Shown: positions 6,688 to 53,289 of the stretch, one piece after another
Position numbering within the stretch: the stretch's first letter is position 1
How the letters are laid out: every line of letters begins with the position of its first letter
IMG/VR virus record: IMGVR_UViG_3300017917_000952
Coordinates: 62,001 to 126,000 of that record
Direction: 5' to 3' (one strand)
Length of the DNA stretch: 64,000 nt
Notes under the pieces: generated by a model
What the model was told of the DNA's origin: nothing
The model's input: only the letters and a program-made list of their open reading frames with translations
Database searches by the model: none
Translations under genes and position numbers: made by a program

Positions 6688-6688
6688 T

Positions 6689-13119: not shown

Positions 13120-13622
13120 GATTCGTTGAGTTCAAAGCAAGCGATTATGAAATACATGATCGTCCGAAACTGGATAAGATCTTGCTAGAACTCTGTCACC
13201 ATATTTTGGAAGGTCAGCGTATTGATTCAAACAAATACGGGATGGTTGCGGCCTGTGTCTTAGACCCCGAAAACCGCAAAGTCTACGGTGTTAACGAGGC
13301 GGCCGGAGACAATAAAAGACGCCACGCAGAACGTGTGGCCATAGATAGATATGAGGAAAACTATGGCCAAGTACCAAAAGGCAGTATTATCATTACAACC
13401 CTAAGTCCTTGTAATGAAGACCATACTGAAATGGCCGATGGTAGATACGGTGAGAGTTGTACAGATCTAGTAAACTCGTCAAACTGTCGCAAGGTCTATT
13501 GCGGATATATAGATCCAACGCAGCACAACGACCACGAAGAATATACCTTAGAAGAAACACAAGAAGGTAAAATCAAAGAACTCTGCAAACGATTCGCAGA
13601 CACTTTTCTGAACGCAAAATAA
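13116..13622 (+). CDS. Zn-dependent cytidine/dCMP deaminase-fold protein
   Basis: HAE...TLSPC-x15-C...VYCG; 'GMVAACVLD' first strand. Confidence 0.8.
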   Translation: MRFVEFKASDYEIHDRPKLDKILLELCHHILEGQRIDSNKYGMVAACVLDPENRKVYGVNEAAGDNKRRHAERVAIDRYEENYGQVPKGSIIITTLSPCNEDHTEMADGRYGESCTDLVNSSNCRKVYCGYIDPTQHNDHEEYTLEETQEGKIKELCKRFADTFLNAK

Positions 13623-14312: not shown

Positions 14313-16985
14313 ATGAGTTACGTTGATGCCATATGGGATCGCGAGAAAGACATCATTCATGCTGTCGAGCGAGATCTTAAAAAGGGTAGACTTTATCAAA
14401 CATTCCCAGCCCGCTATCTGTTTTACTATCCAGATGCTAAGGGCAAATATAAATCAATCCACGGCGAAAGCCTATCAAAAGTTACTGCAAAGAATTGGAA
14501 AGAGTTCATTAAAGAACAAAAGATCCATAGCGGTTACAAACTATACGAAAGCGACATCAACCCTGTATTTCGCTGTCTCGAAGAAAACTATCTAGGTAAG
14601 GAACCTCCAAAACTGAATGTAGCGTTTTGGGATATTGAGGTGGACTTCGATCCAGAGCGCGGCTATGCATCGCCCGATGATGCATTTATGCCAATCACTG
14701 CGATTGCCGTTCACCTACAATGGTTAGATACATTAGTCTGTCTTGCTATTCCTCCAAAGACTCTAACAATGGAGCAGGCACAAGAACAGGTTAAAGACTT
14801 TCCTAACACGTTTCTGTTCGAAACAGAATACGAAATGTTAGACACTTTTCTTAACCTAATTGAGGATGCCGACATTCTAAGCGGCTGGAACAGTGAAGGT
14901 TTCGATATGCCGTACACGGTAAATAGAATTATAAAGGTTCTAAGTAAAGAAGATACACGCAGACTGTGCCTTTGGAACCAAATGCCCAAGAAGCGGGAGT
15001 ACGAAAAATATGGAAAAGCGGCTGTTACTTATGACCTGGTTGGTCGTGTTCATTTGGACAGTCTCGAGCTGTACCGCAAATACACATATGAAGAGCGTCA
15101 CACCTACAGACTGGACGCAATTGGGGAAATGGAGATAGGTGAATCAAAGACTGTCTATGAAGGCACACTTGATCAACTATACAATAATGATTTCCGCAAG
15201 TTTATTGAATACAACAGGCAAGACTGTGCGCTGTTAAACAAACTTGATAAGAAATTAAAATTCATTGACCTTGCAAACACCATTGCACATGAAAACACTG
15301 TGTTGCTACAGACTACAATGGGCGCTGTTGCTGTTACGGAACAGGCTATTGTAAATGAAGCACATCACAGAGGACTAATCGTTCCAAGTCGTCCACGTAG
15401 AGATGATACAGTTAATAGTGCGGCTGCTGGTGCGTATGTTGCATATCCTAAAAAAGGACTTCACGACTGGATTGGCTCTATGGACATTAACAGTCTGTAT
15501 CCATCTGTCATTCGTGCATTGAACATGGGTCCAGAAACTATTGTCGGACAGTTAAGGCCAGATTATACTAAAGCAGAAATTGAAGAAAAAACAACTGCTA
15601 AGGGATTAAGTTTTGCCGGCTCATGGGAAGGCAAGTTCGGTAGTAACGAATATGAATTTGTTATGGCACAGGACAAAGCCCACGATATTATCATTGACTG
15701 GGAGAATGGTAGCACTGATGTAATGAGTGGTGCCGAAATTTATAAACTAATATTCGAAAGCGGCAAGCCTTGGATGATAAGTGCGAACGGCACAATCTTT
15801 ACACATGAGCACGAAGGAGTTATTCCCGGATTGCTAAAGCGTTGGTACGCTGAACGTAAAGAAATGCAGGCCAAACTTAAAGAGGCAATTAAGGCCGAAA
15901 ATAAAATCGAAGAAGAATATTGGGACAAGCGTCAGTTGGTTAAAAAGATTAACTTAAACAGTCTGTACGGCGCTATTCTTAATGTGGGCTGTAGATTCTT
16001 TGATGATAGAATCGGACAATCAACTACATTAACAGGACGACAAATTGCACGTCATATGGCTGCAAAAATTAATGAAGTTGTAACAGGCGAGTATGATCAC
16101 GTAGGTAAAGCAATTATCTACGGTGATACAGACTCTGCTTATTTCAGCGCCTATAGCAGTCTTAAAAATGAAATTGCAAAAGGACAAATCCCTTGGGACA
16201 AAGATACCGTTATACAACTATATGACACTGTAGCCAACGAAGTTAACAGCACATTCCCGCAGTTCATGCTCGATGCTTTCCACTGCCCAAAGAGCCGTGG
16301 CGAAGTTATCAAAGCAGGTCGAGAAATTGTTGCTATCAAGGGTCTGTTTATTACTAAGAAACGTTATGCAGTTCTTGTATATGACAAAGAAGGTAAGCGT
16401 AAAGATAAAGACGGCAAGCCGGGAGAAATCAAGGCTATGGGTCTAGATCTGAAGCGTAGCGACACACCTGAATTTATGCAGGAATTCCTAACTGAGATCC
16501 TAACAAAGGTCCTAAATGGCAGCGAAGAAAAAGAAATTCTAGATAGAATTGTCGAGTTCAGAACCGAATTTAAGGCTCGACCTGGTTGGGAGAAAGGTAG
16601 TCCAAAACGTGCAAACAATATTACAGACTACGAGGAAAAAGAAAAGAAAGCAGGCAAGGCAAATATGCCCGGTCATGTCCGAGCAAGTATTAATTGGAAT
16701 ACTCTCCGCAGAATGAACGGTGACAAATACAGTATGCAAATTGTCGACGGTATGAAGGTTATCGTCTGCAAGTTAAAGTCCAATCCTCTAGGATTTACCA
16801 GTGTTGCATATCCTGTAGATGAACTACGTTTACCTAAGTGGTTTATGGAACTGCCGTTTGATCACGGAGAAATGGAAGCCACCATTATTAACAACAAGGT
16901 TGAAAACCTTATTGGTGTACTGGAATGGGATTTGAACAGTACACAAGAAACAAACACATTTGGTAGTTTATTCAGTTTTGAATAA
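14313..16985 (+). CDS. gp43: Family B DNA polymerase (T4 gp43-like)
   Basis: Exo DIEVD, WNSEGFD, YNRQD; Pol DINSLYPS, KKINLNSLYG, YGDTDS, KKRYA. Confidence 0.96.
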   Translation: MSYVDAIWDREKDIIHAVERDLKKGRLYQTFPARYLFYYPDAKGKYKSIHGESLSKVTAKNWKEFIKEQKIHSGYKLYESDINPVFRCLEENYLGKEPPKLNVAFWDIEVDFDPERGYASPDDAFMPITAIAVHLQWLDTLVCLAIPPKTLTMEQAQEQVKDFPNTFLFETEYEMLDTFLNLIEDADILSGWNSEGFDMPYTVNRIIKVLSKEDTRRLCLWNQMPKKREYEKYGKAAVTYDLVGRVHLDSLELYRKYTYEERHTYRLDAIGEMEIGESKTVYEGTLDQLYNNDFRKFIEYNRQDCALLNKLDKKLKFIDLANTIAHENTVLLQTTMGAVAVTEQAIVNEAHHRGLIVPSRPRRDDTVNSAAAGAYVAYPKKGLHDWIGSMDINSLYPSVIRALNMGPETIVGQLRPDYTKAEIEEKTTAKGLSFAGSWEGKFGSNEYEFVMAQDKAHDIIIDWENGSTDVMSGAEIYKLIFESGKPWMISANGTIFTHEHEGVIPGLLKRWYAERKEMQAKLKEAIKAENKIEEEYWDKRQLVKKINLNSLYGAILNVGCRFFDDRIGQSTTLTGRQIARHMAAKINEVVTGEYDHVGKAIIYGDTDSAYFSAYSSLKNEIAKGQIPWDKDTVIQLYDTVANEVNSTFPQFMLDAFHCPKSRGEVIKAGREIVAIKGLFITKKRYAVLVYDKEGKRKDKDGKPGEIKAMGLDLKRSDTPEFMQEFLTEILTKVLNGSEEKEILDRIVEFRTEFKARPGWEKGSPKRANNITDYEEKEKKAGKANMPGHVRASINWNTLRRMNGDKYSMQIVDGMKVIVCKLKSNPLGFTSVAYPVDELRLPKWFMELPFDHGEMEATIINNKVENLIGVLEWDLNSTQETNTFGSLFSFE

Positions 16986-16993
16986 AAAATCTG

Positions 16994-17022
16994 TTGACTT
17001 TTTACTACCGCCTAAATAAAAT
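16994..17022 (+). promoter_or_regulatory. sigma70-like promoter with overlapping CTAAATA late-type motif
   Basis: TTGACT-N17-TAAAAT; CTAAATA 17012-17018. Confidence 0.65.
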
Positions 17023-17041: not shown

Positions 17042-17776
17042 ATGAAAGCAATCTTACAAGACATCGTCGCACATACAAACAAACTAGGGTTTTTAAATAT
17101 CGTTAAAGTAACAGGTACTAAAGATAAAACTCTAGTCGACAGTATGGCTGATGACCGTAGCGTTATTATGTACGCAGAAACAAAGGACCCACAGCCAAGT
17201 ATGCAGGGTGTGTTCGGTATGCCTCAACTCGAAAAACTTCGTTATCTTGTTGACGGTAAAGAATACCAAGACGATGCCAAGATCGAAGTTGTTACAGCAG
17301 ATCGAAACGGTGAGACTATTCCTGTAGGCTTACACTTTGAAAACAAAGACGGTGACTTCAAGAACGACTATCGTTTTATGAACACTGAGATTATTAACGA
17401 GAAACTTAAGACTGTTAAGTTCCGTGGTGTTAACTGGCATGTTGAAGTTGAACCTACGGTTAGTGCTATCCAGCGTTTCCAATTCCAAGCAGGTGCAAAT
17501 ACAGAACATACAACGTTCCTTGCAAAGACTGACGGAGATAAACTTGTGTTTGTTTTTGGTGATCAAAGCACTCACGGTGGCGAGTTTGTTTTTGCATCTG
17601 GCATTACTGGAAAGATCACAAAGGCATGGACATGGCCTGTTAACAGCGTTCTAAGTATTCTTAAGATCGCAGACGGTAACAATACTAAAATGAGTTTTAG
17701 TAACGACGGTGCTATGCAGATCGAATTAGACAGTGGCATTGCTACTTACAAATATATCATTCCTGCACAAGCATGA
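17042..17776 (+). CDS. Probable sliding clamp (gp45-like)
   Basis: 244 aa, alternating alpha/beta two-domain pattern, directly after polB; start MKAIL at 17042. Confidence 0.6.
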   Translation: MKAILQDIVAHTNKLGFLNIVKVTGTKDKTLVDSMADDRSVIMYAETKDPQPSMQGVFGMPQLEKLRYLVDGKEYQDDAKIEVVTADRNGETIPVGLHFENKDGDFKNDYRFMNTEIINEKLKTVKFRGVNWHVEVEPTVSAIQRFQFQAGANTEHTTFLAKTDGDKLVFVFGDQSTHGGEFVFASGITGKITKAWTWPVNSVLSILKIADGNNTKMSFSNDGAMQIELDSGIATYKYIIPAQA

Positions 17777-18126
17777 TCAATAACATATCAGGCATGAATA
17801 ATGTTGTCGTTATGAACGGCAACTCGTTCATGCCGTATGTAAACATGTCAAACCCTAGTGCTGGCATAGTCCGATACAATGGTAGTAACCAAAGTATGGA
17901 AGTGTATGACGGAAATAGTTGGTTGACTATGAATAATAATCATGTTAATATCGATCTGTCTGGTGCTGCTAATGCCGCCATTGCTTGGGCTATGAATAAG
18001 ATGGCAGAAGAAGCACAGTTAGAAAAGATGGCGGCAGAGCACCCTGCTGTAAAGGCAGCATATGAAAATATGAAACGTGCCGCAGAACAATTAAAAGCAA
18101 CAATAATATTGAGTAAAGATGAGTAA
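17773..18126 (+). CDS. Hypothetical protein
   Basis: 117-aa ORF with overlapping start/stop coupling. Confidence 0.65.
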   Translation: MINNISGMNNVVVMNGNSFMPYVNMSNPSAGIVRYNGSNQSMEVYDGNSWLTMNNNHVNIDLSGAANAAIAWAMNKMAEEAQLEKMAAEHPAVKAAYENMKRAAEQLKATIILSKDE

Positions 18127-19675
18127 CCCACCACGCAACCTAACACCGTTGCAGAAAGATTATGCTGTATATCTTCCTGCCATTAGTAGTTTCTACAGCA
18201 CCTATGTCGCAAAACAACGTCTAGAAGAATTTGTACCCAAGGATCGTATCCCTGCAGGATTTGATCGAGGAATTGAGGGTATGAACTTTCTTAACCCCGA
18301 ACAGGGCTACTTTACCTACAAGTATGCTCTATATTCTGCAGGTCACGCACAGTTAGATATTGTTAAGGCACAAACGCAAGAGTCAATGATCCAACAACGC
18401 GATAGAGGTAACTCTTTAATCTTAGGTGACTCCGGTGGGTATCAGATCGGTAAAGGCGTTCTTAAATTTGACTGGCTTAACTTTGAAGGCAAGGAAGCAA
18501 ACAAAACACGTCAACAGATTTTAGAATGGCTAGAAGCAACCGCCGATTGGTCAATGATGCTCGACGTTCCTACATGGGCCTGCGATCACATCCATAGTCC
18601 AAAGACTGGACTAAAAACATTTGACGATTGTCTAGACAAGACACGCTTCAATAACGATTACTTCCTTAAGAACCGCCTAGGTGCTACTAAGTGGCTTAAT
18701 GTTCTACAAGGCAGTGATTGGGATACTGCCGAAAAATGGTATAACGGTGTAAAAGAATTCAGCGATCCTAAAGGCAAGTATGCCGGTAAGGAAGCCGAAG
18801 GGTGGGCCTTCGGTGGTGCTAACATGTGTAAAATGGATATTACACTCAAGCGTCTAATGACCTTGCGTGAAGATGGTTTGCTGAAAGGCAAAAACTGGAT
18901 CCACTTCCTGGGTACAGCACAGTTAGATTGGTCGTGCTATCTAACGCAAATTCAACGTCAAATTAGGAAACACATCAATGAAGAAATTACCATATCTTTT
19001 GACTGCGCCTCACCGTTCATCGCAACAGCACACGGACTCGTCTACACAAACGCAGTCCACACGCCCAAAAGGTGGAGTGTTATTATGGACAAAGCCCCAG
19101 ATAACAAAGCACTTTCAGGAAGCGACATCCCGTTCCCATTCGAAAGCGAATTCGGTCGCAGGTTAACATTAGGTGATATCTGTTACTATGCTCCAGGTAT
19201 GCTTAACAAGATTGGCAAAGAAGGTAAAACTTCTTGGGATAGTTTTGCTTATGCACTTATGATGGGTCATAATGTCGAGTGTCATATTATTGCTGTACAA
19301 CGAGCACAGCAGTTAATGGACATTGAAGTTGCAAAGACCAAGGGTAAGATCAACTGGAAACACTGGAAGAAAGTAAAGTCCGGAGACATGAGTGACGAAT
19401 ACAGTGATTGGGTTCCTCGCAATATCCTATACTTCTCGAACTTTATCGAAGACCTGTTCAACACCAAAACAAAAGCAGAAGCATTTGAAATGATCGAGCA
19501 AGCAGGTCCTTTCTTACGCAGTCTAGAAGGTGCCCGACTGCAAGGTGGTCCTGCACAGAATACATTCGGTAACTTGTTTGAAATTGAAACGGTTACAGAT
19601 CAAAACGAAATCGATCTTGCTAACCCAGACGACGACGATCTAAGAGCGCTTGAAGAAGGTATTACAGGAGAATAA
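18119..19675 (+). CDS. dpdA: tRNA-guanine transglycosylase-fold protein, probable DNA 7-deazaguanine inserting enzyme (DpdA-like)
   Basis: TGT core motifs in order: GDSGGYQ, MLDVP, VLQG, AFGG, HFLG, SFDCASP, late HN; queE in same neighbourhood. Confidence 0.75.
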   Translation: MSNPPRNLTPLQKDYAVYLPAISSFYSTYVAKQRLEEFVPKDRIPAGFDRGIEGMNFLNPEQGYFTYKYALYSAGHAQLDIVKAQTQESMIQQRDRGNSLILGDSGGYQIGKGVLKFDWLNFEGKEANKTRQQILEWLEATADWSMMLDVPTWACDHIHSPKTGLKTFDDCLDKTRFNNDYFLKNRLGATKWLNVLQGSDWDTAEKWYNGVKEFSDPKGKYAGKEAEGWAFGGANMCKMDITLKRLMTLREDGLLKGKNWIHFLGTAQLDWSCYLTQIQRQIRKHINEEITISFDCASPFIATAHGLVYTNAVHTPKRWSVIMDKAPDNKALSGSDIPFPFESEFGRRLTLGDICYYAPGMLNKIGKEGKTSWDSFAYALMMGHNVECHIIAVQRAQQLMDIEVAKTKGKINWKHWKKVKSGDMSDEYSDWVPRNILYFSNFIEDLFNTKTKAEAFEMIEQAGPFLRSLEGARLQGGPAQNTFGNLFEIETVTDQNEIDLANPDDDDLRALEEGITGE

Positions 19676-19676
19676 C

Positions 19677-20087
19677 ATGGCAACGTGGAAAATTTCTAAT
19701 AGAGACAAAAAGAATTGTGAAGAAAGACAATTCTGGGTCAAGGACGGACAGACTATTACTAGAATTGAAGGATTCCGTTGGGGATCATTTACTGTAGAAA
19801 CGTCCGACGATGAACCGCCTGAGGGAATTACTGAAGAAAACGAAGACGGTATCGACATGTACAGTTATTTCGGCGACAACGCAGAAGACGGTGCTGAACT
19901 AGATATGATGGATGACGGCTGCTACGGCGACTGGGAGTTTCCGGAGGGCATGGACGAGGAAGAACAAGAACGTATCATCGAAGGATGGGACGAAGATAGT
20001 TATGAATTTATGGAAGGCGACGGTTGGGTCAATGACGAAACCGAGGCGTGGTTATTTGGACCCCTTAATATTGAAAAGGTAAACTAA
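19677..20087 (+). CDS. Highly acidic hypothetical protein
   Basis: Start MATWK at 19677 after AGGAG; about 41 D/E vs about 10 K/R in 136 aa by hand count. Confidence 0.7.
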   Translation: MATWKISNRDKKNCEERQFWVKDGQTITRIEGFRWGSFTVETSDDEPPEGITEENEDGIDMYSYFGDNAEDGAELDMMDDGCYGDWEFPEGMDEEEQERIIEGWDEDSYEFMEGDGWVNDETEAWLFGPLNIEKVN

Positions 20088-20088
20088 A

Positions 20089-20385
20089 ATGGCACGGAAA
20101 AAGAAAACTGAAGAGCAAGTTATTGCCGAAGTATCTAAACTAATTGCAGAAGAAACACTTCAGGCTACTGAACCAAAAAAGAAGAAAGTAAAAGAAGTAT
20201 GGCCAAAAGTGATCCAAGGCAGTCATAGCACTAGAACCGAATACGAAGATGGTCGCGTAGACTTTGTTACAGATTGGGATGCTCTGCAAAGAGATGTAAG
20301 AGAAGCACTAGCCGCATACGAACTTAGCCAAAAGAAGCCTGCGGTGAAAGCCAAAATGGTTCGTAAAAAGAAAGTTTCTGAGTAA
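20089..20385 (+). CDS. Hypothetical basic protein
   Basis: 98-aa ORF in operon. Confidence 0.65.
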   Translation: MARKKKTEEQVIAEVSKLIAEETLQATEPKKKKVKEVWPKVIQGSHSTRTEYEDGRVDFVTDWDALQRDVREALAAYELSQKKPAVKAKMVRKKKVSE

Positions 20386-20402
20386 TTTGGTAAAATTAGT
20401 AG

Positions 20403-20431
20403 TTGACTATTATCCAAAGTTTTGCTATATT
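20403..20431 (+). promoter_or_regulatory. sigma70-like promoter (extended -10)
   Basis: TTGACT-N17-TATATT with TGc. Confidence 0.65.
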
Positions 20432-20437
20432 AATAAT

Positions 20438-20962
20438 ATGAAACGTGATTACACTGATGGTAATTTAGATGATGTAAACTTCTTCTTTGGAGAAGAAGTT
20501 GAACACACACCGGCATATGGTATGGACACTCTATTCGTAGTCGGCGTCCAACCAATTGAAACTATTGAACATTACCTATCAGGTACTACATACCAAACAA
20601 AGCATATTTTCTTCGGGGCCAATCATAGTTTTAATCCAAAAGATAATCTCGATTGGCAACGTTGGGAATCTATGATTCAGCACTTTTTAGATAAAGATTA
20701 TCTATGCAGTCTCGACATTCCGATGAGTGCTGTTGAAGAATTTCACGAAGGTGGCCTTTGTGAATCGGATAACTTTATTCCCCAAATTCGTGTTCCTATT
20801 CCGTACATTCGTCTCTGGAATTATAACACAATGATTAAAATCGACGACAAAGACTTCAAAGCCACTAATCCCGGTGTATGGAGTCATAGTCTGCATAAAT
20901 TAATGGACCGAGAGTGCTTTACTGACTGGTCTAAATATAAAAACGATAAGGTAATGAAATGA
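20438..20962 (+). CDS. Hypothetical protein in deazaguanine neighbourhood
   Basis: Start MKRDY at 20438; EVEHTPA.G..TLFV, HIFFGANHSF, alpha/beta pattern. Confidence 0.7.
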   Translation: MKRDYTDGNLDDVNFFFGEEVEHTPAYGMDTLFVVGVQPIETIEHYLSGTTYQTKHIFFGANHSFNPKDNLDWQRWESMIQHFLDKDYLCSLDIPMSAVEEFHEGGLCESDNFIPQIRVPIPYIRLWNYNTMIKIDDKDFKATNPGVWSHSLHKLMDRECFTDWSKYKNDKVMK

Positions 20963-21135
20963 TTAATTCAAAAATTGTCAAGGGTGTTCCTAAAGAAGAT
21001 GCCCAAGAAAAACTGTTTAAGTTGCTCGAAAGTATTGACTGGAAGTTGTGGGAAATGTATAATATGATGAAAGACAATCTTCCTGCAAAAAACGAAACTG
21101 CTTCTAAAACAAAAAAGAAGGCCGAAAATGAGTGA
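20959..21135 (+). CDS. Small hypothetical protein (58 aa, not in ORF track)
   Basis: Hand translation MINSKIVKGVPKEDAQEKLFKLLESIDWKLWEMYNMMKDNLPAKNETASKTKKKAENE*; fills the gap exactly and overlaps both neighbours. Confidence 0.6.
   Translation: MINSKIVKGVPKEDAQEKLFKLLESIDWKLWEMYNMMKDNLPAKNETASKTKKKAENE
21035..21063 (+). promoter_or_regulatory. sigma70-like promoter internal to small ORF
   Basis: TTGACT-N17-TATAAT. Confidence 0.55.
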
Positions 21136-21511
21136 ACGCAATATGATCTGGGTTACTTTTCGCAAGGAAGGTATTCACATGTACCCAGCGGCTGCAACAG
21201 ATCCTAATCTTAAAACAGGTGACGAATATGACGTTAGTTTCCTCGGTACTCCACATCGTCATATCTTCCATTTCAAAGTCTATATTCAAGTATTTCACGA
21301 TGATCGTGATATTGAGTTTATTCAGTTTAAGCGTTGGCTAGAGAAGTGCTATAGCGACGGCACACTCGAGCTCAACCACAAATCCTGCGAGATGATTGCA
21401 CGAGAACTTCATGCAACTATCAAGGCAAGATATCCAGGTCGTAAGATTTGGATTGACGTAAGTGAAGACGGCGAAAATGGCTGCTTCATTAAATTTCCAT
21501 CAACCCTTTAA
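21128..21511 (+). CDS. T-fold QueD-like protein with LxxxHRHxF motif (DpdL-like candidate)
   Basis: EGIH..., FLGTPHRHIFHF, DIEFI, SCEMIA, VSED; His-rich metal site typical of PTPS/QueD fold. Confidence 0.65.
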   Translation: MSERNMIWVTFRKEGIHMYPAAATDPNLKTGDEYDVSFLGTPHRHIFHFKVYIQVFHDDRDIEFIQFKRWLEKCYSDGTLELNHKSCEMIARELHATIKARYPGRKIWIDVSEDGENGCFIKFPSTL

Positions 21512-21525
21512 TTAGGAAACACAAC

Positions 21526-21777
21526 ATGTCGATTCCGGCATACATTCAAAAAACTCTCGTTATGAAGCCCGAAGTTACCAAGATCTTTGATGACCTCGAA
21601 AAATGGCACGATCACTGCCGCTTTGAATTGATCAACTTTGATCCTAAGGACCTGTACCGGTCCAAGGAATATAAGGATTGGTCTCGAGGCTTTGAAAAGA
21701 AGCCATGGAATGGCGAGCGTAAGCCATACCAAGGTAAGAATCCGAGATATTCGAATGGCGAACGTTTTTCTCGTTGA
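21526..21777 (+). CDS. Hypothetical protein
   Basis: 83-aa ORF with AGGA SD. Confidence 0.6.
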   Translation: MSIPAYIQKTLVMKPEVTKIFDDLEKWHDHCRFELINFDPKDLYRSKEYKDWSRGFEKKPWNGERKPYQGKNPRYSNGERFSR

Positions 21778-22819
21778 TCTAGAAAGCGTAGAAACAAGGT
21801 ACACGGGTCAATGGAAGGCCCATGTACCTTCCTTACTACGAAAGGCAGGACATAATGTTCAAGTTATTTCGGGACCTACTGATATTCCTGCATCAACTAC
21901 CCCAGGCGCTTTTCTTAACTTTGGCGGAACGAATATCTACAAAGCATCCCAAGTGGAGCAGATGGGTCGTTTATTCTGCGCCGGAACTGTCAGCCCTGGC
22001 GATCATTTTCTTTTTACTGATGCTTGGCATCCTGGTATCATTAATCTTCGATATATGAGCGAGCTTCTTAACATTCCTGTTAAGATTCACGCATTATGGC
22101 ATGCTGGTAGTTACGACCCCCAAGACTTCTTAGGACGTCTTATCGGAGATGCTCCGTGGGTTAGACACGCTGAGAAAAGTTTTTATCATGCGATTGACCA
22201 TAACTATTTTGCTACGCAGTTTCATATAAAACTATTCTGCGAAACTCTATTAGGTTTTACTCCTGCTGAAAAACTGTACGACACTAAAATTGTACGCACA
22301 GGCTGGCCAATGGAATATATGGTTGATACTCTTACTCCATATAAAGGTATGGACAAGAGAAATCTTATTTTGTTTCCGCATAGACTGGCTCCAGAGAAGC
22401 AGGTGGAAATTTTTAGAGATTTGAAAGAACACTTACCTCAATATGAATTTGTTATTTGTCAAGAACAAGAATTGACAAAGAATGAATATCATAATTTGCT
22501 AGGAGAAGCAAAGATGGTGTTTAGCGCCAACTTACAAGAGACACTTGGTATTAGTTGGTATGAAGGCGCTATCGTTGATGCTATTCCTATGATGCCAGAC
22601 AGACTAAGTTACAGTGAAATGGCCTATGCTACATTTAAGTATCCTAGTGAATGGACTGAGTCATACACAGCGTACACAGAGCACCGTCAAGAGTTATGTG
22701 CTAAAATAATTCAATACATGGACAATTACGAAAAGTTCTTGCCTACGTTGAGAAAACAGACACAAGACTTAACAACAAACTTTTTTAGTGCAAATGGTTT
22801 ACTGGAGAACATTAAATGA
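21755..22819 (+). CDS. GT-B (family 4/Glycos_transf_1-like) glycosyltransferase
   Basis: Start MANVF at 21755; FPHRLAPEK and E-x7-E motif ETLGISWYE; PDRLSYSEM. Confidence 0.8.
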   Translation: MANVFLVDLESVETRYTGQWKAHVPSLLRKAGHNVQVISGPTDIPASTTPGAFLNFGGTNIYKASQVEQMGRLFCAGTVSPGDHFLFTDAWHPGIINLRYMSELLNIPVKIHALWHAGSYDPQDFLGRLIGDAPWVRHAEKSFYHAIDHNYFATQFHIKLFCETLLGFTPAEKLYDTKIVRTGWPMEYMVDTLTPYKGMDKRNLILFPHRLAPEKQVEIFRDLKEHLPQYEFVICQEQELTKNEYHNLLGEAKMVFSANLQETLGISWYEGAIVDAIPMMPDRLSYSEMAYATFKYPSEWTESYTAYTEHRQELCAKIIQYMDNYEKFLPTLRKQTQDLTTNFFSANGLLENIK

Positions 22820-23280
22820 AATGGTTTCTTAAAATTCTAGAACGACTAGGTCGTAAACGTATTGTAATGGACAGGATTAACAATGAGCCTTATCTCGAAC
22901 GCTACTACCTCTTTCTTAAAGATAGAAAGCATTTCCCCTTCAATGTGTTTCTTCACCGTTTCCTTAAATCAGATCCCGATGATGTGCATGATCATCCATG
23001 GGGTTACGCAACGCTTATCTTAAAAGGCGGCTACTATGAATGGGTGGGCAAGTTTAACTCCAACGGCGAAAAGATTGGTGAAGTTAGAATGTGGCGTGGC
23101 CCTGGCCATTTCCGTGTATGTAGTGCTACTTCTTACCATCGTATTGAACTTGACCCAGGGGTAGACTGCTGGACTTTGTTCATGCCCGGTCCTCAGAAGA
23201 GAGAATGGGGATTCTGGTATAAGGGTGCTTGGATGCACAATGACCAATACCTTAAAGGTCGGTCAGAGGGAACTTTGTAA
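22816..23280 (+). CDS. Cupin-fold protein
   Basis: HDHPW...GGYYE...YHRIEL...WTLFMPG metal-binding cupin pattern. Confidence 0.7.
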   Translation: MKWFLKILERLGRKRIVMDRINNEPYLERYYLFLKDRKHFPFNVFLHRFLKSDPDDVHDHPWGYATLILKGGYYEWVGKFNSNGEKIGEVRMWRGPGHFRVCSATSYHRIELDPGVDCWTLFMPGPQKREWGFWYKGAWMHNDQYLKGRSEGTL

Positions 23281-24289
23281 TTTTTTGATCGTCCTCATCA
23301 ATGCAAGACCTCATTCCGCACTTTTGAGGTCCTTGCGGAGGCATCCACCCGGGGTGCCAAATATTGCCTAGTGCAATGTTGTTACAGTTACTTCCGCTTA
23401 CCCATCCCTGAGCACCTATAACTAGTTTCTCAACTCCTGCGTTACACAACTGCCCGGTGAAACTAGGATGCTTGTTATACGTTTCCTCATATCGTTCTTG
23501 CCATGTAGTCTCTTGAAAATATATTTTTTCTTCGACTAGAGGACTTTTTTCAATTATAGGCGGTGGAGGGGGCGGGGGTGGCGGAGCAACTACTGGAGGT
23601 GCTTCAGCAAGGCGGCGGCGCATTTCTTCTTCTCTGCGTTTCTGTTCTTCTAAGCGTCTTGCTCTTTCTATTAAAACTTGTTCCCTATGCTCTTTGGTAA
23701 GATTAAAAAAATCAATCTTTTGCAGTTCTTCAAAAGAATACTTTAACATTCCTGCGGACGGATCTGCATTAAAATATAATTGTGTTTTAGTTATAACTAT
23801 ACCAAGTTCTTCTTCTAGTTCAAGAACTCTATTAATATCTTCTTCAACGTGTGTGTTTCTTATCGGTGCAGTAATTGAAATCTTTTTGTTTTTTGATTTA
23901 AAAGTATCAAATATATATTTGATTAAAGAGGGGCTTTGCCAAAAATGAAATGTTAGAATTAGATTATCAACATGAGGTTCTATAGCCCACCAATCCATCC
24001 ATAATCTGCCGCCGCTAGTATGTAAGGTAATGCTATCACTATTTGCTCTGCATAGTTTGAGTAATTGGGGCATATAGTCCATATCCAGTGGCTCGCCTCC
24101 ATTAAATATCCAATCAATGCTTCTGTTTTGCTTTATCTTGTAAGAATCGATTAGCAGTTGGGCAATTCTAAGATACTCGTTTATGTCTTGAGGAACTGGA
24201 CCCCCTCGAGAGCTCGTTGGACAATATTCACATTGGGCCTTACAATAGTCGTTTAAGGTCCAGGAAATAATGGTTTTTAAATTATCCAT
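23252..24289 (-). CDS. Radical SAM protein with C-terminal Cys-containing (twitch/SPASM-like) domain
   Basis: YCKAQCEYC (CxxxCxxC), NGGEP, TSG, C-terminal CNAG...C...CGMRSC; internal coiled coil and poly-Pro. Confidence 0.8.
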   Translation of the reverse strand: MDNLKTIISWTLNDYCKAQCEYCPTSSRGGPVPQDINEYLRIAQLLIDSYKIKQNRSIDWIFNGGEPLDMDYMPQLLKLCRANSDSITLHTSGGRLWMDWWAIEPHVDNLILTFHFWQSPSLIKYIFDTFKSKNKKISITAPIRNTHVEEDINRVLELEEELGIVITKTQLYFNADPSAGMLKYSFEELQKIDFFNLTKEHREQVLIERARRLEEQKRREEEMRRRLAEAPPVVAPPPPPPPPPIIEKSPLVEEKIYFQETTWQERYEETYNKHPSFTGQLCNAGVEKLVIGAQGWVSGSNCNNIALGNIWHPGWMPPQGPQKCGMRSCIDEDDQKITKFPLTDL

Positions 24290-24296
24290 AATATAG

Positions 24297-24325
24297 TTGA
24301 CAGGTCTAAATACACTCTGTATAAT
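24297..24325 (+). promoter_or_regulatory. Consensus sigma70-like promoter
   Basis: TTGACA-N17-TATAAT. Confidence 0.8.
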
Positions 24326-24350
24326 GTACTTATCTTATCAAGGCTATAAA

Positions 24351-24638
24351 ATGCAGGCTAACCCAAATAGATACCAAGAAGCATTAGACATTCTGCAGGA
24401 AGAATGCGGAGAAGTAATTGTAGAAGTTAGCAAGTGTCGCAGGTTTGGTCTAAATACAACACATTACAAAACAGGCCTAGAGCATAACAAAATGCTCGAA
24501 ATTGAAATAGGTGATGTGTTAGCAATGATTGATATCTTAGAAGAACAGGGTATCATAGACCACACTGCGTTAATGCACGCCAAGTCAAAGAAAAAAGAAA
24601 AACTTAAACAATGGTCAAAAATATATGAGCAAAATTAA
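24351..24638 (+). CDS. MazG-like all-alpha NTP pyrophosphohydrolase
   Basis: LQEECGEV...EIEIGDVLAMI (EExxE...ExxD); start at 24351. Confidence 0.7.
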   Translation: MQANPNRYQEALDILQEECGEVIVEVSKCRRFGLNTTHYKTGLEHNKMLEIEIGDVLAMIDILEEQGIIDHTALMHAKSKKKEKLKQWSKIYEQN

Positions 24639-25479
24639 AGTCGCAGAATTATTCTATTCTATTCAAGGCGAAGGACGCTATATGGGTGTTCCTTCTGTCT
24701 TTCTTCGCACCTTTGGGTGTAATTTTAAATGCCAAGGGTTTGGCATGCCACGAGGAGAACTAAGCAATGAGGCAGAAAATATTGACGCTACTAAGTACAC
24801 CGAGTACAAATCGCTTCCTTTGGTTTCTACAGGTTGTGACAGTTACGCTAGTTGGGATCCTCGCTTTAAGCATCTATCCCCTCTTCTGGATACTTCTGCG
24901 ATTGCCGACGCTATTGTGGATACGTTACCGCACAAGGAATGGCGGGACGAACATCTCGTAATTACAGGTGGTGAGCCTTTGCTAGGTTGGCAGAAGCAGT
25001 ATCCTGATTTACTCGATCATCCTAAGATGCGTAGTTTGAGAGAAATTACATTTGAGACAAACGGTACAATGCGCCTAACGCCTGCATTCACAGAATATCT
25101 AAAAAACTGGCAATGGAGTCACGAAAAGAACCTTACAAGAGAAATTACATTTAGTGTCAGTGCTAAACTTCCTGTAAGTGGCGAACCGTGGAAGGATGCT
25201 ATCAAACCGGCCGTGGTTAAATCTTATCAAGACATTGGTGCCAACGTCTATCTTAAGTTTGTGATTACCAACGAAGAAGATTTAAAGGACGCTGAACGAG
25301 CAGTCGAAGAATTTAGGGCAGGTGGGTTTACTGGACACGTATACCTTATGCCTGTTGGCGGTGTAGAGTCTGTGTATGCACTAAACAATAGGAACGTAGC
25401 AGACATTGCCATGCGTAAAGGTTGGAGATATTCAGATCGACTTCAAGTGCCACTGTTTAAAAACGAGTGGGGCACCTAA
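24625..25479 (+). CDS. queE: 7-carboxy-7-deazaguanine synthase (radical SAM)
   Basis: ELFYSIQGEG...GVPSVFLRTFGCNFKC...CDS, ITGGEP, ETNGT, SVSAK, LKFV, RLQV. Confidence 0.85.
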   Translation: MSKIKVAELFYSIQGEGRYMGVPSVFLRTFGCNFKCQGFGMPRGELSNEAENIDATKYTEYKSLPLVSTGCDSYASWDPRFKHLSPLLDTSAIADAIVDTLPHKEWRDEHLVITGGEPLLGWQKQYPDLLDHPKMRSLREITFETNGTMRLTPAFTEYLKNWQWSHEKNLTREITFSVSAKLPVSGEPWKDAIKPAVVKSYQDIGANVYLKFVITNEEDLKDAERAVEEFRAGGFTGHVYLMPVGGVESVYALNNRNVADIAMRKGWRYSDRLQVPLFKNEWGT

Positions 25480-28647: not shown

Positions 28648-29730
28648 ATGGCAGAGCAAATTTCCACCAGCCGAACTGTTACTCCTAACGAAGCAAAGCG
28701 AGCTCTTCGTAAGTGTATCAAAATTCAACGCCCTGTGTTTATGTGGGGTCCTCCGGGTATTGGTAAGTCCGATATCGTCAAGCAAATCGGCGAAGAATAC
28801 GAACGCGAAGTTGTCGACGTTCGACTCAGTCTTTGGGAACCTACTGATATCAAAGGTATCCCTTATTACAACGGCCAGGCCAATACTATGAGCTGGGCTC
28901 CTCCTGCAGAACTGCCTACCGACGAAGACAGCACTGCTATTCTGTTCCTTGACGAACTGAATTCTGCGGCTCCTGCTACTCAAGCGGCTGCTTATCAACT
29001 TATCCTGAATCGCCGTGTTGGTACTTATGTACTGCCCAAAGGTGTTTCAATTGTTGCCGCCGGTAACCGTGAAACTGACAAGGGTGTTACTTATCGTATG
29101 CCTGCTCCGCTGGCTAACCGTTTTGTTCACATTGAACTTAAAACGGATTACGAAGACTGGCTCCAATGGGCTACTATCAATCGTGTTCACGAACAAGTGG
29201 TTGGTTACGTTGGCTTTGCCAAGCAAGACCTTTACGACTTCGATCCTAAGTCTGCAAGCCGGGCATTCGCTACTCCTCGTTCTTGGTCCTTTGTTAGCGA
29301 ACTTCTGCAAGACGACGACCTGCCCGAGAACACTCTGACTGATCTAGTCGCTGGTGCTATCGGCGAAGGTCTTGCTGTTAAGTTCATGGCTCACCGTAAG
29401 GTTGCCAAGCAGATGCCTAAGCCCGAAGACATTCTGGCAGGCAAGGTCAAGAAGTGTGACATCAAAGAAATCTCTGCGATGTATTCGCTAACTGTTTCTA
29501 TGTGCTACGAACTCCAAACTGCACATGAGAAGAAAGTAAAAGACTGGGATTCGATGGCAGACAACTTCTTCGGCTTCATGATGGATAACTTCCCGACTGA
29601 ATTGGTTGTTATGGGTGCAAAGGTTGCGTTGACTAACTATCAACTGCCGTTTGATGCTTCCAAACTGACAAACTTCGATCGCTTCCACGACAAGTACGGT
29701 AAGTTCATTATCACTGCAATGGAAGGTTAA
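28648..29730 (+). CDS. MoxR-like AAA+ ATPase
   Basis: GPPGIGKS, LFLDELN, AAGN, ANRF, TPRSW. Confidence 0.88.
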   Translation: MAEQISTSRTVTPNEAKRALRKCIKIQRPVFMWGPPGIGKSDIVKQIGEEYEREVVDVRLSLWEPTDIKGIPYYNGQANTMSWAPPAELPTDEDSTAILFLDELNSAAPATQAAAYQLILNRRVGTYVLPKGVSIVAAGNRETDKGVTYRMPAPLANRFVHIELKTDYEDWLQWATINRVHEQVVGYVGFAKQDLYDFDPKSASRAFATPRSWSFVSELLQDDDLPENTLTDLVAGAIGEGLAVKFMAHRKVAKQMPKPEDILAGKVKKCDIKEISAMYSLTVSMCYELQTAHEKKVKDWDSMADNFFGFMMDNFPTELVVMGAKVALTNYQLPFDASKLTNFDRFHDKYGKFIITAMEG

Positions 29731-53282: not shown

Positions 53283-53289
53283 TATTTAT
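53283..53289 (-). promoter_or_regulatory. T4-late-like promoter motif ATAAATA
   Basis: Upstream of gp25-like gene. Confidence 0.55.

What the first reader, a model, noticed from the sequence alone, without database searches (positions are those of the whole stretch)
18119..25479. 7-deazaguanine DNA-modification neighbourhood with extra tailoring genes: possible new hypermodified base
Seen: a TGT-fold enzyme with the catalytic motifs, a T-fold QueD-like protein, QueE, and between them a glycosyltransferase, a cupin, a MazG-like pyrophosphatase and unknown ORFs, all downstream of polB/clamp with sigma70-like promoters. Known: phages use FolE/QueD/QueE(/QueC) plus DpdA to put 7-deazaguanine derivatives into DNA against restriction. 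Inference: the added glycosyltransferase and cupin suggest a decorated, possibly sugar-bearing deazaguanine, which is outside the set of phage deazaguanine bases I know (dPreQ0, dPreQ1, dG+, dADG, dCDG, dDG, methyl/formyl-PreQ1).
Basis: partly seen in the sequence, partly recalled or inferred. Interest (0 to 1): 0.88.

Follow-up and report, generated by a model that had tools for sequence, protein, structure and literature searches.

The report
Deazaguanine DNA module with conserved glycosyltransferase
A roughly 370-kb uncultured jumbo phage carries the known gene set for replacing guanine in its DNA with 7-deazaguanine, plus a sugar-transferring enzyme that always travels with it, so the DNA base may carry a sugar, which has never been described for a deazaguanine.

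Summary
The genes are there as described. The module is 18119-25479:
- 18119-19675 is a TGT/DpdA-fold transglycosylase (AF2 pLDDT 90.7; top 22 PDB fold hits are all TGT).
- 21128-21511 is DpdL, not an ordinary QueD. It carries the published LxxxHRHxF signature of the predicted 7-carboxy-7-deazaguanine decarboxylase.
- 24625-25479 is QueE.
- 24351-24638 is MazG-like.
- 21755-22819 is a GT4-type glycosyltransferase with an EX7E motif.

The predicted scaffold is therefore 7-deazaguanine (dDG), a base already known from Cellulophaga phage phiST.

What is new is the company it keeps. DpdA, a 174-aa unknown partner (20438-20962), DpdL and the GT form an invariant core: 39/39 and 37/37 metagenomic loci, plus PA5oct, ACP17, Phosso, X1 and BCSR5. 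Relatives place NDP-sugar genes directly after the GT (HddA/HddC-like, or a nucleotide-sugar dehydrogenase-like ORF).

phiST, the only DpdL phage whose base was measured, lacks the GT. PA5oct DNA has a modified G of unknown chemistry.

The cupin belongs to a family common in phages without deazaguanine genes. Both are poor tailoring candidates.

A sugar-bearing deazaguanine is plausible (about 0.4) but unproven.

The parts
14313..16985 (+). Family B DNA polymerase (context; the module follows it)
   Evidence: Pfam DNA_pol_B 1e-37 and DNA_pol_B_exo1 9e-18. 52% identity to the PA5oct DNA polymerase.
17042..17776 (+). Putative sliding clamp (context; not verified)
   Evidence: 35% identity to PA5oct EST35_0314 at the same position. 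The ORF at that position in Phosso is annotated as a sliding clamp. No Pfam hit. A promoter-like site at 16994-17022 covers the TTG that the ORF listing took as the start.
18119..19675 (+). DpdA-family (TGT-fold) transglycosylase, 518 aa; predicted to exchange guanine in DNA for the deazaguanine base
   Evidence: Invariant DSGGYQ, D149 and D295. The family profile hits almost only TGT in the PDB. AF2 pLDDT 90.7. Foldseek PDB top 22 hits are all TGT, E 1e-6 to 5e-4. BFVD hits include the phage Motura 'tRNA guanine transglycosylase' at 6e-12 and a Vibrio phage nt-1 protein at 5e-9. The profile hits the ACP17 424-aa ORF beside dpdL, presumed to be its DpdA, at 2e-10.
19650..20087 (+). Variable acidic ORF (145 aa, pI 4.1, 29% D+E); not part of the core
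   Evidence: Present in 16/39 relatives. Composition. No family hit.
20089..20385 (+). Variable basic ORF (98 aa, pI 9.6); not part of the core
   Evidence: Present in 26/39 relatives. No family hit.
20438..20962 (+). Conserved 174-aa partner of DpdA ('o191'), fold unassigned
   Evidence: Present in 39/39 and 34/37 loci. In many relatives its start overlaps the DpdA stop by 4-11 nt, and in L048 the two are fused in one 677-aa ORF. Among cultured phages, homologues occur only in the PA5oct group and ACP17. AF2 pLDDT 76.9, with no significant fold match.
20959..21135 (+). Small variable ORF (58 aa)
   Evidence: Present in 21/39 relatives.
21128..21511 (+). DpdL: QueD-like T-fold paralogue, predicted 7-carboxy-7-deazaguanine decarboxylase
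   Evidence: Carries the motif L-GTP-HRH-I-F, which fits LxxxHRHxF as defined in PMC10516641 section 16. An iterated HMM hits phiST DpdL at 5e-32; tblastn gives 35% identity at 1e-8. 36-67% identity to DpdL proteins against 16-20% to canonical QueD.
21755..22819 (+). GT4-type (GT-B) glycosyltransferase, 354 aa; invariant companion of DpdL in this lineage
   Evidence: Invariant E262...E270 (EX7E). Pfam Glycos_transf_1 matches 6/11 family members, best 8e-12, and the L093 orthologue scores 31 bits against a cut-off of 26.4. The best PDB hit is the GT4 enzyme WlaC at 0.002. Present in 39/39 and 37/37 loci.
22816..23280 (+). CDO-like cupin candidate (154 aa); accessory, probably not specific to the pathway
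   Evidence: PHROG 4786 at 1.9e-38. Invariant H58-D-H60 and H108. 108 phage records, mostly without deazaguanine genes. Present in 37/39 close relatives but only 17/37 DpdL-seeded loci.
23252..24289 (-). Radical SAM protein with a Cys-rich C-terminal (SPASM/twitch-like) domain; variable accessory gene on the opposite strand
   Evidence: Invariant C16-x3-C20-x2-C23 plus C282, C302, C324 and C329. Pfam Radical_SAM at 1e-4, below the cut-off. The profile hits the SkfB C-terminus at 4e-4 and QueE 5tgs at 2e-3. No homologue in 50,697 phage records. Present in 21/39 and 3/37 loci.
24297..24325 (+). Perfect sigma-70 consensus (TTGACA-17-TATAAT) in the gap between the divergent radical SAM and MazG genes
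   Evidence: 12 of 12 matches.
21035..21063 (+). Promoter-like site (TTGACT-17-TATAAT) upstream of dpdL
   Evidence: 11 of 12 matches.
24351..24638 (+). MazG-like nucleotide pyrophosphohydrolase (95 aa from the corrected start)
   Evidence: Pfam MazG at 2e-4, 21.9 bits against a cut-off of 22. The orthologue in L090 was called at 94 aa with a weak MazG hit. A MazG-like gene also lies in the phiST dDG cluster.
24625..25479 (+). QueE-like radical SAM enzyme (7-carboxy-7-deazaguanine synthase)
   Evidence: PHROG 2076 at 5e-54. NCBIfam QueE models reach 2e-16 but stay below their cut-offs. The HMM hits phiST QueE at 4e-66. Invariant C32, C36, C71 and TGGEP.

Best explanation
The region is a DpdL-type 7-deazaguanine DNA-modification module to which a glycosyltransferase has been added as a fixed component. 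The proposed route has six steps.
1. GTP is converted to CPH4 by FolE and QueD. These are not in this 64-kb window, so they come from the host or from elsewhere in the roughly 370-kb genome.
2. QueE makes 7-carboxy-7-deazaguanine.
3. DpdL removes the carboxyl group to give 7-deazaguanine.
4. The large DpdA-family transglycosylase, working with its 174-aa partner, swaps guanine in phage DNA for this base after replication.
5. The GT4-type enzyme then transfers a sugar from an NDP-sugar onto the deazaguanine, either in DNA or on the free base before insertion. Virion DNA would then carry a glycosylated 7-deazaguanine rather than plain dDG, protecting it from restriction.
6. MazG-like pyrophosphatase trims the nucleotide pool.

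Shown here: fold and family of DpdA, DpdL, QueE and the GT; the invariant co-occurrence; and NDP-sugar genes beside the GT in relatives. Inferred: all enzymatic activities, DNA as the target, the sugar, and the acceptor atom. C7 or C8 of the pyrrole ring and the N2 amine are candidate acceptors.
For: Family and fold assignments: DpdA; DpdL; QueE; GT.

Invariant core. DpdA, o191, DpdL and the GT are each present in 39/39 DpdA-seeded loci that span DpdA to QueE. In DpdL-seeded loci with at least 4 kb on both sides, DpdA, DpdL and the GT are each in 37/37 and o191 in 34/37.

Cultured phages. The GT lies between or next to DpdA and DpdL in PA5oct-like phages, ACP17, X1/BUDD and BCSR5, and next to DpdL in Phosso, whose DpdA-family gene lies about 170 kb away.

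NDP-sugar genes directly after the GT. L093 has an HddA-like sugar kinase (5e-64) and an HddC-like sugar-1-P guanylyltransferase (6e-49). In 14 of the 80 DpdA-seeded loci there is a nucleotide-sugar dehydrogenase-like ORF (TIGR03026 at 6e-40).

The GT tracks DpdL, not the DpdA family. Vibrio phage 2.275.O has the same DpdA family with QueC and QueF but neither DpdL nor the GT.

phiST, where plain dDG was measured, has DpdL but no GT (PMC10516641). Expression of ACP17 dpdL plus dpdA in E. coli gave no dDG, and the authors suggested that other enzymes may be required. PA5oct DNA resists G-containing restriction sites and is targeted by a G-modification-sensing nuclease, but its chemistry is undetermined (PMC12191111).

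ThyA in the window passes its equivalog cut-offs, so no hydroxymethyl-pyrimidine acceptor pathway is evident.
Against: - No chemical data exist for this phage or any GT-carrying relative.
- 7-Deazaguanine has no hydroxyl group, and GT4 enzymes normally glycosylate oxygen nucleophiles, so the acceptor is unexplained.
- DpdL's decarboxylase activity is itself only predicted.
- The window's own GT scores below the Pfam cut-off (12 bits), and the GT-B fold was not modelled.
- The window lacks the NDP-sugar genes seen in relatives.
- The nucleotide-sugar dehydrogenase-like ORF covers only positions 73-293 of the 413-position model.
- DpdL phages without the GT exist: phiST, RHph_I1_18 and Ahp1.
- Gene linkage inside a replication module can reflect shared timing rather than a shared pathway.
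Confidence: 0.45

Rival explanations
1. Plain dDG, as in phiST. The module makes 2'-deoxy-7-deazaguanosine in DNA and nothing more. The GT, and the NDP-sugar genes of relatives, act on something else, such as host envelope glycans, a phage or host protein, or a small molecule. They sit here only because they share early or middle expression.
For: DpdL, QueE, DpdA and MazG are the phiST set that gives 100% dDG (PMC10516641). 7-Deazaguanine offers no obvious oxygen acceptor. DpdL clusters without the GT exist. HddA/HddC-type enzymes normally serve surface glycans (established knowledge of the GDP-heptose pathway).
Against: The GT is present in 39/39 and 37/37 loci and lies immediately beside DpdA or DpdL in five distant cultured lineages, despite heavy gene turnover around it. 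It is absent from a phage with the same DpdA family but a preQ1-type pathway. dpdA plus dpdL alone failed to give dDG in E. coli.
Confidence: 0.3
2. The GT is needed to make or deliver the base rather than to decorate it. It might form a transient glycosylated intermediate, or act as a structural subunit of a DpdA/o191/DpdL complex. The final DNA base is then still an unglycosylated deazaguanine.
For: Reconstitution failed without the GT and o191. Gene pairs are tightly coupled, and DpdA and o191 are fused in L048. A purine phosphoribosyltransferase-like gene sits in 16/37 related clusters, which hints at chemistry on the free base or nucleotide.
Against: phiST makes dDG without any GT. The catalytic EX7E glutamates are invariant. 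Dedicated NDP-sugar synthesis genes in relatives argue for stoichiometric sugar use.
Confidence: 0.12
3. One reading: the cupin (as an oxygenase) and/or the radical SAM enzyme tailor the base or the sugar further, giving a more elaborate hypermodification specific to this sub-lineage.
For: Both genes occupy the variable slot between the GT and QueE, where relatives carry NDP-sugar genes. The cupin is present in 37/39 close relatives. The radical SAM gene and the dehydrogenase-like/FolE pair never co-occur (0/39). Twitch/SPASM radical SAM enzymes include sugar-modifying members such as BtrN, which gave a weak hit at E 0.64.
Against: The cupin family is spread over 108 phage records that mostly lack deazaguanine genes, and it is in only 17/37 DpdL-seeded loci. 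The radical SAM gene is on the opposite strand, in 21/39 and 3/37 loci, with no homologue in cultured phages. Neither is found near the modules of PA5oct, ACP17, Phosso, X1 or BCSR5. The mutual exclusion may simply reflect two sub-clades.
Confidence: 0.1
4. The TGT-fold enzyme modifies tRNA, not DNA.
For: The closest solved structures are tRNA-guanine transglycosylases. No DNA assay exists for this family.
Against: The TGT Zn-site cysteines are not conserved. The gene sits directly after polB and the putative clamp. It groups structurally with phage DpdA-like proteins. PA5oct, which carries a 42%-identical orthologue, has restriction-resistant DNA. The phage DpdA proteins characterised so far act on DNA (PMC10516641).
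Confidence: 0.03

Closest known systems
phiST-type dDG system (DpdA3 + DpdL + FolE/QueD/QueE + MazG; Cellulophaga phage phiST; PMC10516641)
   Same: DpdL with the LxxxHRHxF signature, QueE, a MazG-like pyrophosphatase, a TGT-fold transglycosylase, no QueC, and a position next to the replicative polymerase.
   Different: The transglycosylase here is 518 aa against 259 aa, and is only marginally similar to phiST DpdA3 (E 0.04). phiST has no GT and no detected o191 homologue. Here FolE and QueD are not in the cluster or the window. The measured base in phiST is plain dDG.
Wroclawvirus (PA5oct-like) jumbo phages of Pseudomonas aeruginosa
   Same: Syntenic block: polB, clamp-like ORF, DpdA-like (42% identity), GT (45%), DpdL (53%), then QueE and a FEN/RNase H gene. 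An o191 homologue lies elsewhere in the genome. PA5oct DNA has a suspected modified G (PMC12191111).
   Different: No cupin, radical SAM or MazG-like homologue was detected near the PA5oct module. The PA5oct DpdL motif reads HFH rather than HRH. No nucleotide-level similarity. The chemistry of the PA5oct base is also unknown.
Acidovorax phage ACP17 (Busanvirus) deazaguanine cluster
   Same: Gene order o191-like, 424-aa TGT-like ORF (presumed DpdA), GT, DpdL, QueE. Its dpdL and dpdA were already studied by Hutinet/Cui et al..
   Different: ACP17 also encodes canonical QueD and FolE in the cluster. The TGT-like ORF is 424 aa and only distantly related (E 2e-10 to the family profile). The published work did not mention the GT or the o191 gene in the text examined.
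T4-type glucosylation of 5-hydroxymethylcytosine by alpha- and beta-glucosyltransferases
   Same: The same logic: a non-canonical base is made first, then decorated with a sugar from an NDP-sugar to block restriction. GT-B-type enzymes act on a base in DNA (established knowledge).
   Different: The base there is a pyrimidine with a hydroxyl acceptor, incorporated as a nucleotide during replication. Here the base is a purine analogue with no hydroxyl, presumably inserted after replication by base exchange. No sequence relationship was tested.
Glycosylated queuosine in eukaryotic tRNA (mannosyl- and galactosyl-queuosine)
   Same: A sugar added by a glycosyltransferase to a 7-deazaguanine derivative in a nucleic acid (own knowledge; a lead only).
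   Different: The substrate there is tRNA, and the acceptor is a hydroxyl of the cyclopentenediol side chain, which 7-deazaguanine lacks. No homology was tested here.

Membership tests
TGT/DpdA superfamily | TGT-type (beta/alpha)8 barrel fold | tested here: met
   AF2 pLDDT 90.7. Foldseek PDB top 22 hits are all TGT, E 1e-6 to 5e-4, probability 1.00.
TGT/DpdA superfamily | Catalytic aspartates in the DSGGxQ motif, the substrate-binding Asp, and the nucleophile Asp (xFDC) | tested here: met
   Invariant D104/S105/G107/Q109, near-invariant D149 and invariant D295 (SFDCASP). The first two align in register with TGT D102 and D156. D295 is matched by motif only.
TGT/DpdA superfamily | Zn-binding CxCxxC...H site of bacterial TGT | tested here: not met
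   No invariant or near-invariant cysteine in the 54-sequence family alignment. Whether this site is obligatory for phage DpdA subfamilies was not established here.
TGT/DpdA superfamily | Guanine-for-deazaguanine exchange in DNA | not testable with these tools
   Needs biochemistry or nucleoside mass spectrometry.
DpdA3 subfamily (phiST CGPG_00065) | Sequence relatedness to phiST or Campylobacter-phage DpdA3 | tested here: inconclusive
   The family profile against phiST DpdA3 gives E 0.04-0.4 over a partial region. Against the ACP17 TGT-like ORF it gives 2e-10, and against the X1 'queuine tRNA-ribosyltransferase' 3e-4. The size differs: 518 against 259 aa.
DpdL (predicted CDG decarboxylase) | LxxxHRHxF in place of the QueD CxxxHGH motif | tested here: met
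   The window protein has L-GTP-HRH-I-F. Canonical QueD proteins in the same alignment keep C-x3-HG(Y).
DpdL (predicted CDG decarboxylase) | Homology to phiST DpdL (CGPG_00067) | tested here: met
   tblastn 35% identity at 1e-8. Iterated HMM at 5e-32.
DpdL (predicted CDG decarboxylase) | Genomic context: DpdA and QueE present, QueC absent | tested here: met
   DpdA and QueE are in the module. No QueC was found among the window ORFs scanned. The rest of the roughly 370-kb genome was not seen.
DpdL (predicted CDG decarboxylase) | Decarboxylation of CDG to 7-deazaguanine | not testable with these tools
   This activity is only predicted in the literature as well.
QueE (7-carboxy-7-deazaguanine synthase) | Radical SAM Cys triad plus GGE-type SAM motif, and a family-level match | tested here: met
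   Invariant C32, C36, C71 and TGGEP. PHROG 2076 at 5e-54. The HMM hits phiST QueE at 4e-66.
QueE (7-carboxy-7-deazaguanine synthase) | NCBIfam equivalog cut-off | tested here: not met
   The best score is 60 bits against a cut-off of 260, so this is a divergent phage branch.
GT4 / GT-B glycosyltransferases | EX7E motif in the C-terminal domain | tested here: met
   E262 and E270 are invariant across 11 homologues, including five cultured phages.
GT4 / GT-B glycosyltransferases | Pfam Glycos_transf_1 above the gathering score | tested here: inconclusive
   The window protein scores 12 bits against a cut-off of 26.4. The L093 orthologue scores 31 bits, and the best family member reaches 8e-12. 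The best PDB hit is the GT4 enzyme WlaC at 0.002.
GT4 / GT-B glycosyltransferases | Two-Rossmann-domain GT-B fold | not tested
MazG nucleotide pyrophosphohydrolase | Pfam PF03819 above the gathering score | tested here: inconclusive
   21.9 bits against a cut-off of 22, E 2e-4.
Cupin / cysteine-dioxygenase-like | Cupin fold with a His-rich metal site | tested here: inconclusive
   PHROG 4786 at 1.9e-38. Invariant H58-x-H60 and H108. No Pfam hit and no PDB profile hit.
Radical SAM (SPASM/twitch type) | CxxxCxxC cluster motif plus a C-terminal auxiliary Cys cluster | tested here: met
   Invariant C16, C20 and C23, and C282, C302, C324 and C329. The SkfB C-terminal region is hit at 4e-4. Pfam PF04055 is below its cut-off, 22.7 against 29.5.

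The most novel reading that the evidence does not exclude
Virion DNA of this abundant jumbo-phage lineage, and of cultured PA5oct, ACP17, Phosso, X1 and BCSR5, carries a glycosylated 7-deazaguanine. It would be made by an invariant four-gene core: a large DpdA, its 174-aa partner, DpdL and a GT4 enzyme. The sugar would differ between sub-lineages according to the NDP-sugar genes inserted after the GT (heptose-type, uronic-acid-type or host-supplied). Because the base has no hydroxyl, the linkage might be a C- or N-glycoside. This would be the first sugar-bearing purine analogue in DNA.
Probability: 0.4. Interest if true: 0.88.

Novelty: new variant of a known kind. Interest (0 to 1): 0.72.

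Why it matters
All eight 7-deazaguanine bases known in DNA have small side groups, and sugars on phage DNA are so far known only on pyrimidines. A sugar on a deazapurine would be a new chemical class of DNA base. It would probably be made by unusual glycosyltransferase chemistry. It would also bear on restriction evasion, on modification-dependent defence nucleases (END-type nucleases already sense PA5oct), on sequencing and cloning of such DNA, and on enzymatic tools for labelling G positions.

The question can be tested directly, because PA5oct and ACP17 are in culture. The analysis also suggests why the published reconstitution of dDG from dpdA plus dpdL failed: two invariant partners, o191 and the GT, were left out. 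Finally, the family is very large in metagenomes (more than 7,000 clusters at 90% identity), so whatever this base is, it is common in nature.

Tried and rejected
- Single-sequence searches of DpdA, DpdL, the GT, the cupin and o191 against Pfam, NCBIfam and the PDB gave nothing useful. Family profiles and structure prediction were needed.
- Megablast of the region against 50,697 phage records found no match.
The single protein was used instead.
- The search for homologous proteins for DpdA and the GT returned only close relatives, so it added abundance but not diversity.
- The fold of o191 could not be assigned. The best Foldseek E is 0.06, to parts of TIM-barrel aldolases, and the PDB profile search found nothing. 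A weak resemblance of o191 to the LDxP region of DpdA (E 1.9) was not pursued.
- The idea that o191 is FolE was rejected, because ACP17 has a canonical FolE immediately upstream of its o191 homologue.
- The idea that the T-fold protein is QueD was rejected in favour of DpdL.
- The idea that the GT serves a hydroxymethyl-pyrimidine pathway was rejected for this window. ThyA passes its equivalog cut-offs and sits next to DHFR, and no hydroxymethylase was seen.
- The idea that the cupin is pathway-specific was rejected.
- The phiST cupin gp032 was not detectably related to the window cupin by HMM.
- Literature searches found no report of a glycosylated deazaguanine in DNA. The search on 'DpdL' alone was swamped by unrelated acronyms. 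No supplementary tables of PMC10516641 are held.

Full report
**What is in the region.** The + strand from 14313 carries these ORFs:
- a family B DNA polymerase (Pfam 1e-37);
- a clamp-like ORF;
- a 117-aa ORF;
- a 518-aa ORF (18119-19675);
- two small variable ORFs, one acidic with pI 4.1 and one basic;
- a 174-aa ORF (true start 20438);
- a 58-aa ORF;
- a 127-aa ORF (21128-21511);
- a 354-aa ORF (true start 21755);
- a 154-aa ORF (22816-23280);
- a 95-aa ORF (true start 24351);
- a 284-aa ORF (24625-25479).

A 345-aa ORF lies on the minus strand at 23252-24289.

The corrected starts come from strong promoter-like sites that overlap the TTG starts reported by the ORF listing, including a perfect TTGACA-17-TATAAT at 24297-24325. 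They also agree with the starts used by relatives. The total number of promoter-like sites is not above shuffled expectation, 45 against 36 +/- 6.

**The transglycosylase.** The 518-aa protein has no hit in Pfam, NCBIfam or PHROGs, yet it belongs to a very large family. There are more than 7,000 clusters at 90% identity and 905 representatives at 50% identity.
- A 54-sequence alignment has invariant DSGGYQ, near-invariant D149 and invariant D295 in SFDCASP.
- The profile finds almost only tRNA-guanine transglycosylases in the PDB. The match is weak but in register with TGT D102 and D156.
- The AF2 model is confident, pLDDT 90.7. Its 22 best PDB matches are all TGT, E 1e-6 to 5e-4 with probability 1.00.
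- Among viral models it matches a phage 'tRNA guanine transglycosylase' and a Vibrio phage nt-1 protein.
- The TGT zinc-site cysteines are not conserved.
- The family profile hits the ACP17 424-aa ORF beside dpdL, presumed to be its DpdA, at 2e-10. It hits phiST DpdA3 only marginally.

I call it a DpdA-family enzyme of uncertain subfamily.

**The T-fold protein is DpdL.** Hutinet, Cui and colleagues defined DpdL as a QueD paralogue in which CxxxHGH is replaced by LxxxHRHxF. They proposed it as the decarboxylase that turns 7-carboxy-7-deazaguanine into 7-deazaguanine, the base that fully replaces G in phiST DNA (PMC10516641).
- The window protein reads L-GTP-HRH-I-F.
- It is 36-67% identical to DpdL proteins and 16-20% identical to canonical QueD.
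- It hits phiST DpdL at 5e-32 with an iterated HMM.

QueE is supported by PHROG 2076 (5e-54), by three invariant cysteines and by a TGGEP motif. The MazG-like gene is borderline in Pfam, but a MazG-like gene is also part of the phiST cluster. No FolE, canonical QueD or QueC was found among the window ORFs scanned. The predicted scaffold is therefore 7-deazaguanine, a base that is already known.

**The glycosyltransferase.** The 354-aa protein has an invariant EX7E pair, E262 and E270.
- Six of eleven family members match Pfam Glycos_transf_1, the best at 8e-12.
- One orthologue passes the gathering score.
- The best PDB hit is a GT4 enzyme.
- The window's own score is below the cut-off, and the fold was not modelled.

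**Linkage of the GT to the pathway.** This is the main result.
- In 39 DpdA-seeded IMG/VR loci spanning DpdA to QueE, the 174-aa partner, DpdL and the GT are each present in 39/39. The cupin is in 37, MazG in 35 and the radical SAM gene in 21.
- In an independent set seeded with DpdL, 37 loci have at least 4 kb on both sides. DpdA and the GT are in 37/37, the partner in 34, FolE in 31, the cupin in 17 and the radical SAM gene in 3.
- In cultured phages, the GT lies between DpdA and DpdL in the PA5oct group and ACP17. It lies next to both in Xanthomonas phage X1 and Burkholderia phage BCSR5, and next to DpdL in Sinorhizobium phage Phosso.
- More distant metagenomic relatives (43-51% DpdA identity) keep the same set.
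- Vibrio phage 2.275.O has the same DpdA family with QueC, QueF and FolE but has neither DpdL nor the GT. The GT therefore tracks DpdL rather than the transglycosylase.
- DpdL clusters without the GT also exist: phiST, RHph_I1_18 and Ahp1. The GT thus behaves as an add-on to the dDG pathway.

**Sugar-donor genes.** In L093 the GT is followed directly by an HddA-like GHMP sugar kinase (NF049969 at 5e-64) and an HddC-like sugar-1-phosphate guanylyltransferase (NF049965 at 6e-49), then a HIT protein, all before QueE. In 14 of the 80 DpdA-seeded loci the GT is followed by a nucleotide-sugar dehydrogenase-like ORF and then FolE. That ORF matches TIGR03026 at 6e-40 but covers only model positions 73-293. 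Two different NDP-sugar modules inserted at the same slot argue that the GT uses an activated sugar as part of this module. The window itself has the cupin, the radical SAM gene and MazG at that slot, and no such sugar genes.

**The partner protein.** The 174-aa ORF often overlaps the DpdA stop codon by 4-11 nt, and in L048 it is fused to DpdA in a 677-aa ORF. Among cultured phages it is found only in the PA5oct group and ACP17. Its AF2 model (pLDDT 76.9) has no significant structural relative. I treat it as a probable DpdA subunit of unknown role.

**The cupin and the radical SAM gene.** The cupin rests on PHROG 4786, labelled 'cysteine dioxygenase', and on conserved histidines. Its family occurs in 108 phage records, dominated by Mycobacterium, Gordonia, Burkholderia and Xylella phages, and none of the cultured DpdL+GT phages appears among the rows listed. 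The radical SAM protein has the canonical Cys triad and a Cys-rich C-terminal domain resembling that of SkfB. It is on the other strand, is variable, and has no homologue in cultured phages. Neither is good evidence for base tailoring.

**What is known experimentally.** Three published observations bear on this.
- phiST, which has no GT, has plain dDG (PMC10516641).
- ACP17 dpdL plus dpdA in E. coli gave no dDG, and the authors suggested that other enzymes may be required.
[quoted passage not shown] The base was not identified (PMC12191111).

I found no report of a glycosylated deazaguanine in DNA.

**Verdict.**
- Identity as a DpdL-type deazaguanine module is near certain at the level of gene families.
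- That the GT belongs to the pathway is likely, about 0.55-0.6.
- That virion DNA carries a sugar-bearing deazaguanine is plausible, about 0.4-0.45. It is chemically unexplained, because 7-deazaguanine has no hydroxyl.

The main rival is plain dDG with an unrelated GT, about 0.3. The window comes from a member of an abundant uncultured lineage with genomes of about 370 kb: a 373,671-bp scaffold carries a 97%-identical DpdA in the same gene order. This lineage is distantly related to PA5oct.

Noticed in passing
L048:6975-9008 (IMG/VR relative); window 18119-19675 and 20438-20962: In one relative the DpdA-like gene and the 174-aa partner are a single 677-aa ORF. In many others the two genes overlap by 4-11 nt. 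In the window, two small variable ORFs (one acidic, one basic) are inserted between them.
   Followed up: partly
L022, L046, L055, L071 and 16 of 37 DpdL-seeded loci (e.g. L071:12768-13265): A purine phosphoribosyltransferase-like gene (Pfam Pribosyltran 6e-17; weak xanthine/HGPRT hits) sits inside many related clusters. It might salvage the guanine released by base exchange, or activate the deazaguanine base. It is absent from the window.
   Followed up: partly
39 IMG/VR loci: The minus-strand radical SAM gene and the pair 'nucleotide-sugar dehydrogenase-like ORF + FolE' never occur together (0/39; 21 loci have the radical SAM gene and 12 have the pair). This could reflect two sub-clades or alternative functions.
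   Followed up: no
window 19650-20087: A 145-aa very acidic ORF (pI 4.1, 29% Asp+Glu), variable among relatives (16/39). Its composition recalls DNA-mimic anti-restriction proteins. No homology evidence.
   Followed up: no
window 37491-49352 (-), 49356-52793 (-), 53286-55559 (-), 55563-58973 (-), 6680-10630 (+): Very large ORFs (3953, 1145, 757, 1136 and 1316 aa). The minus-strand block is presumably structural. None was analysed.
   Followed up: no
window 1562-2398, 2407-2901, 10872-11318, 737-1270: Auxiliary genes: a DnaJ-type chaperone (J domain plus C-terminal domain), peptide deformylase, a ferritin-like protein and a 3-TM holin-like protein.
   Followed up: no
window 28648-29730 and 29819-31087: A MoxR-type AAA ATPase followed by a DUF2201 metallopeptidase/VWA-like protein, a conserved gene pair. 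The first is 62% identical to a PA5oct ATPase.
   Followed up: no
window 13116-13622, 32294-32770, 32767-33651: dCMP deaminase-like, DHFR and a bona fide thymidylate synthase (above the NCBIfam cut-offs), so thymidine synthesis looks conventional. The DHFR's best NCBIfam hits include trimethoprim-resistance models, but all are far below their cut-offs.
   Followed up: partly
L004, L010, L016, L070, L076 and others (e.g. L010:11744-13771): A 665-675-aa subtilase (Peptidase_S8 at 6e-34) is inserted after the GT, or before QueE, in several relatives. Its function in this context is unknown.
   Followed up: no
L001 (PA5oct 216595-221821) versus window 14313-16985: The PA5oct DNA polymerase is split by a homing-endonuclease gene. 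The window's polB is a single 890-aa ORF that aligns to both halves.
   Followed up: no
L097:3454-3855: A relative carries a Tad6-family ORF (Pfam PF25188) between polB and the clamp-like gene, and a methyltransferase-like ORF directly after its DpdA.
   Followed up: no
window 21512-21754: A 240-bp gap between dpdL and the GT holds an 83-aa ORF (21526-21777) that relatives also call (79 aa in L090), and a weak terminator-like hairpin at 21604-21620. No family hit.
   Followed up: no
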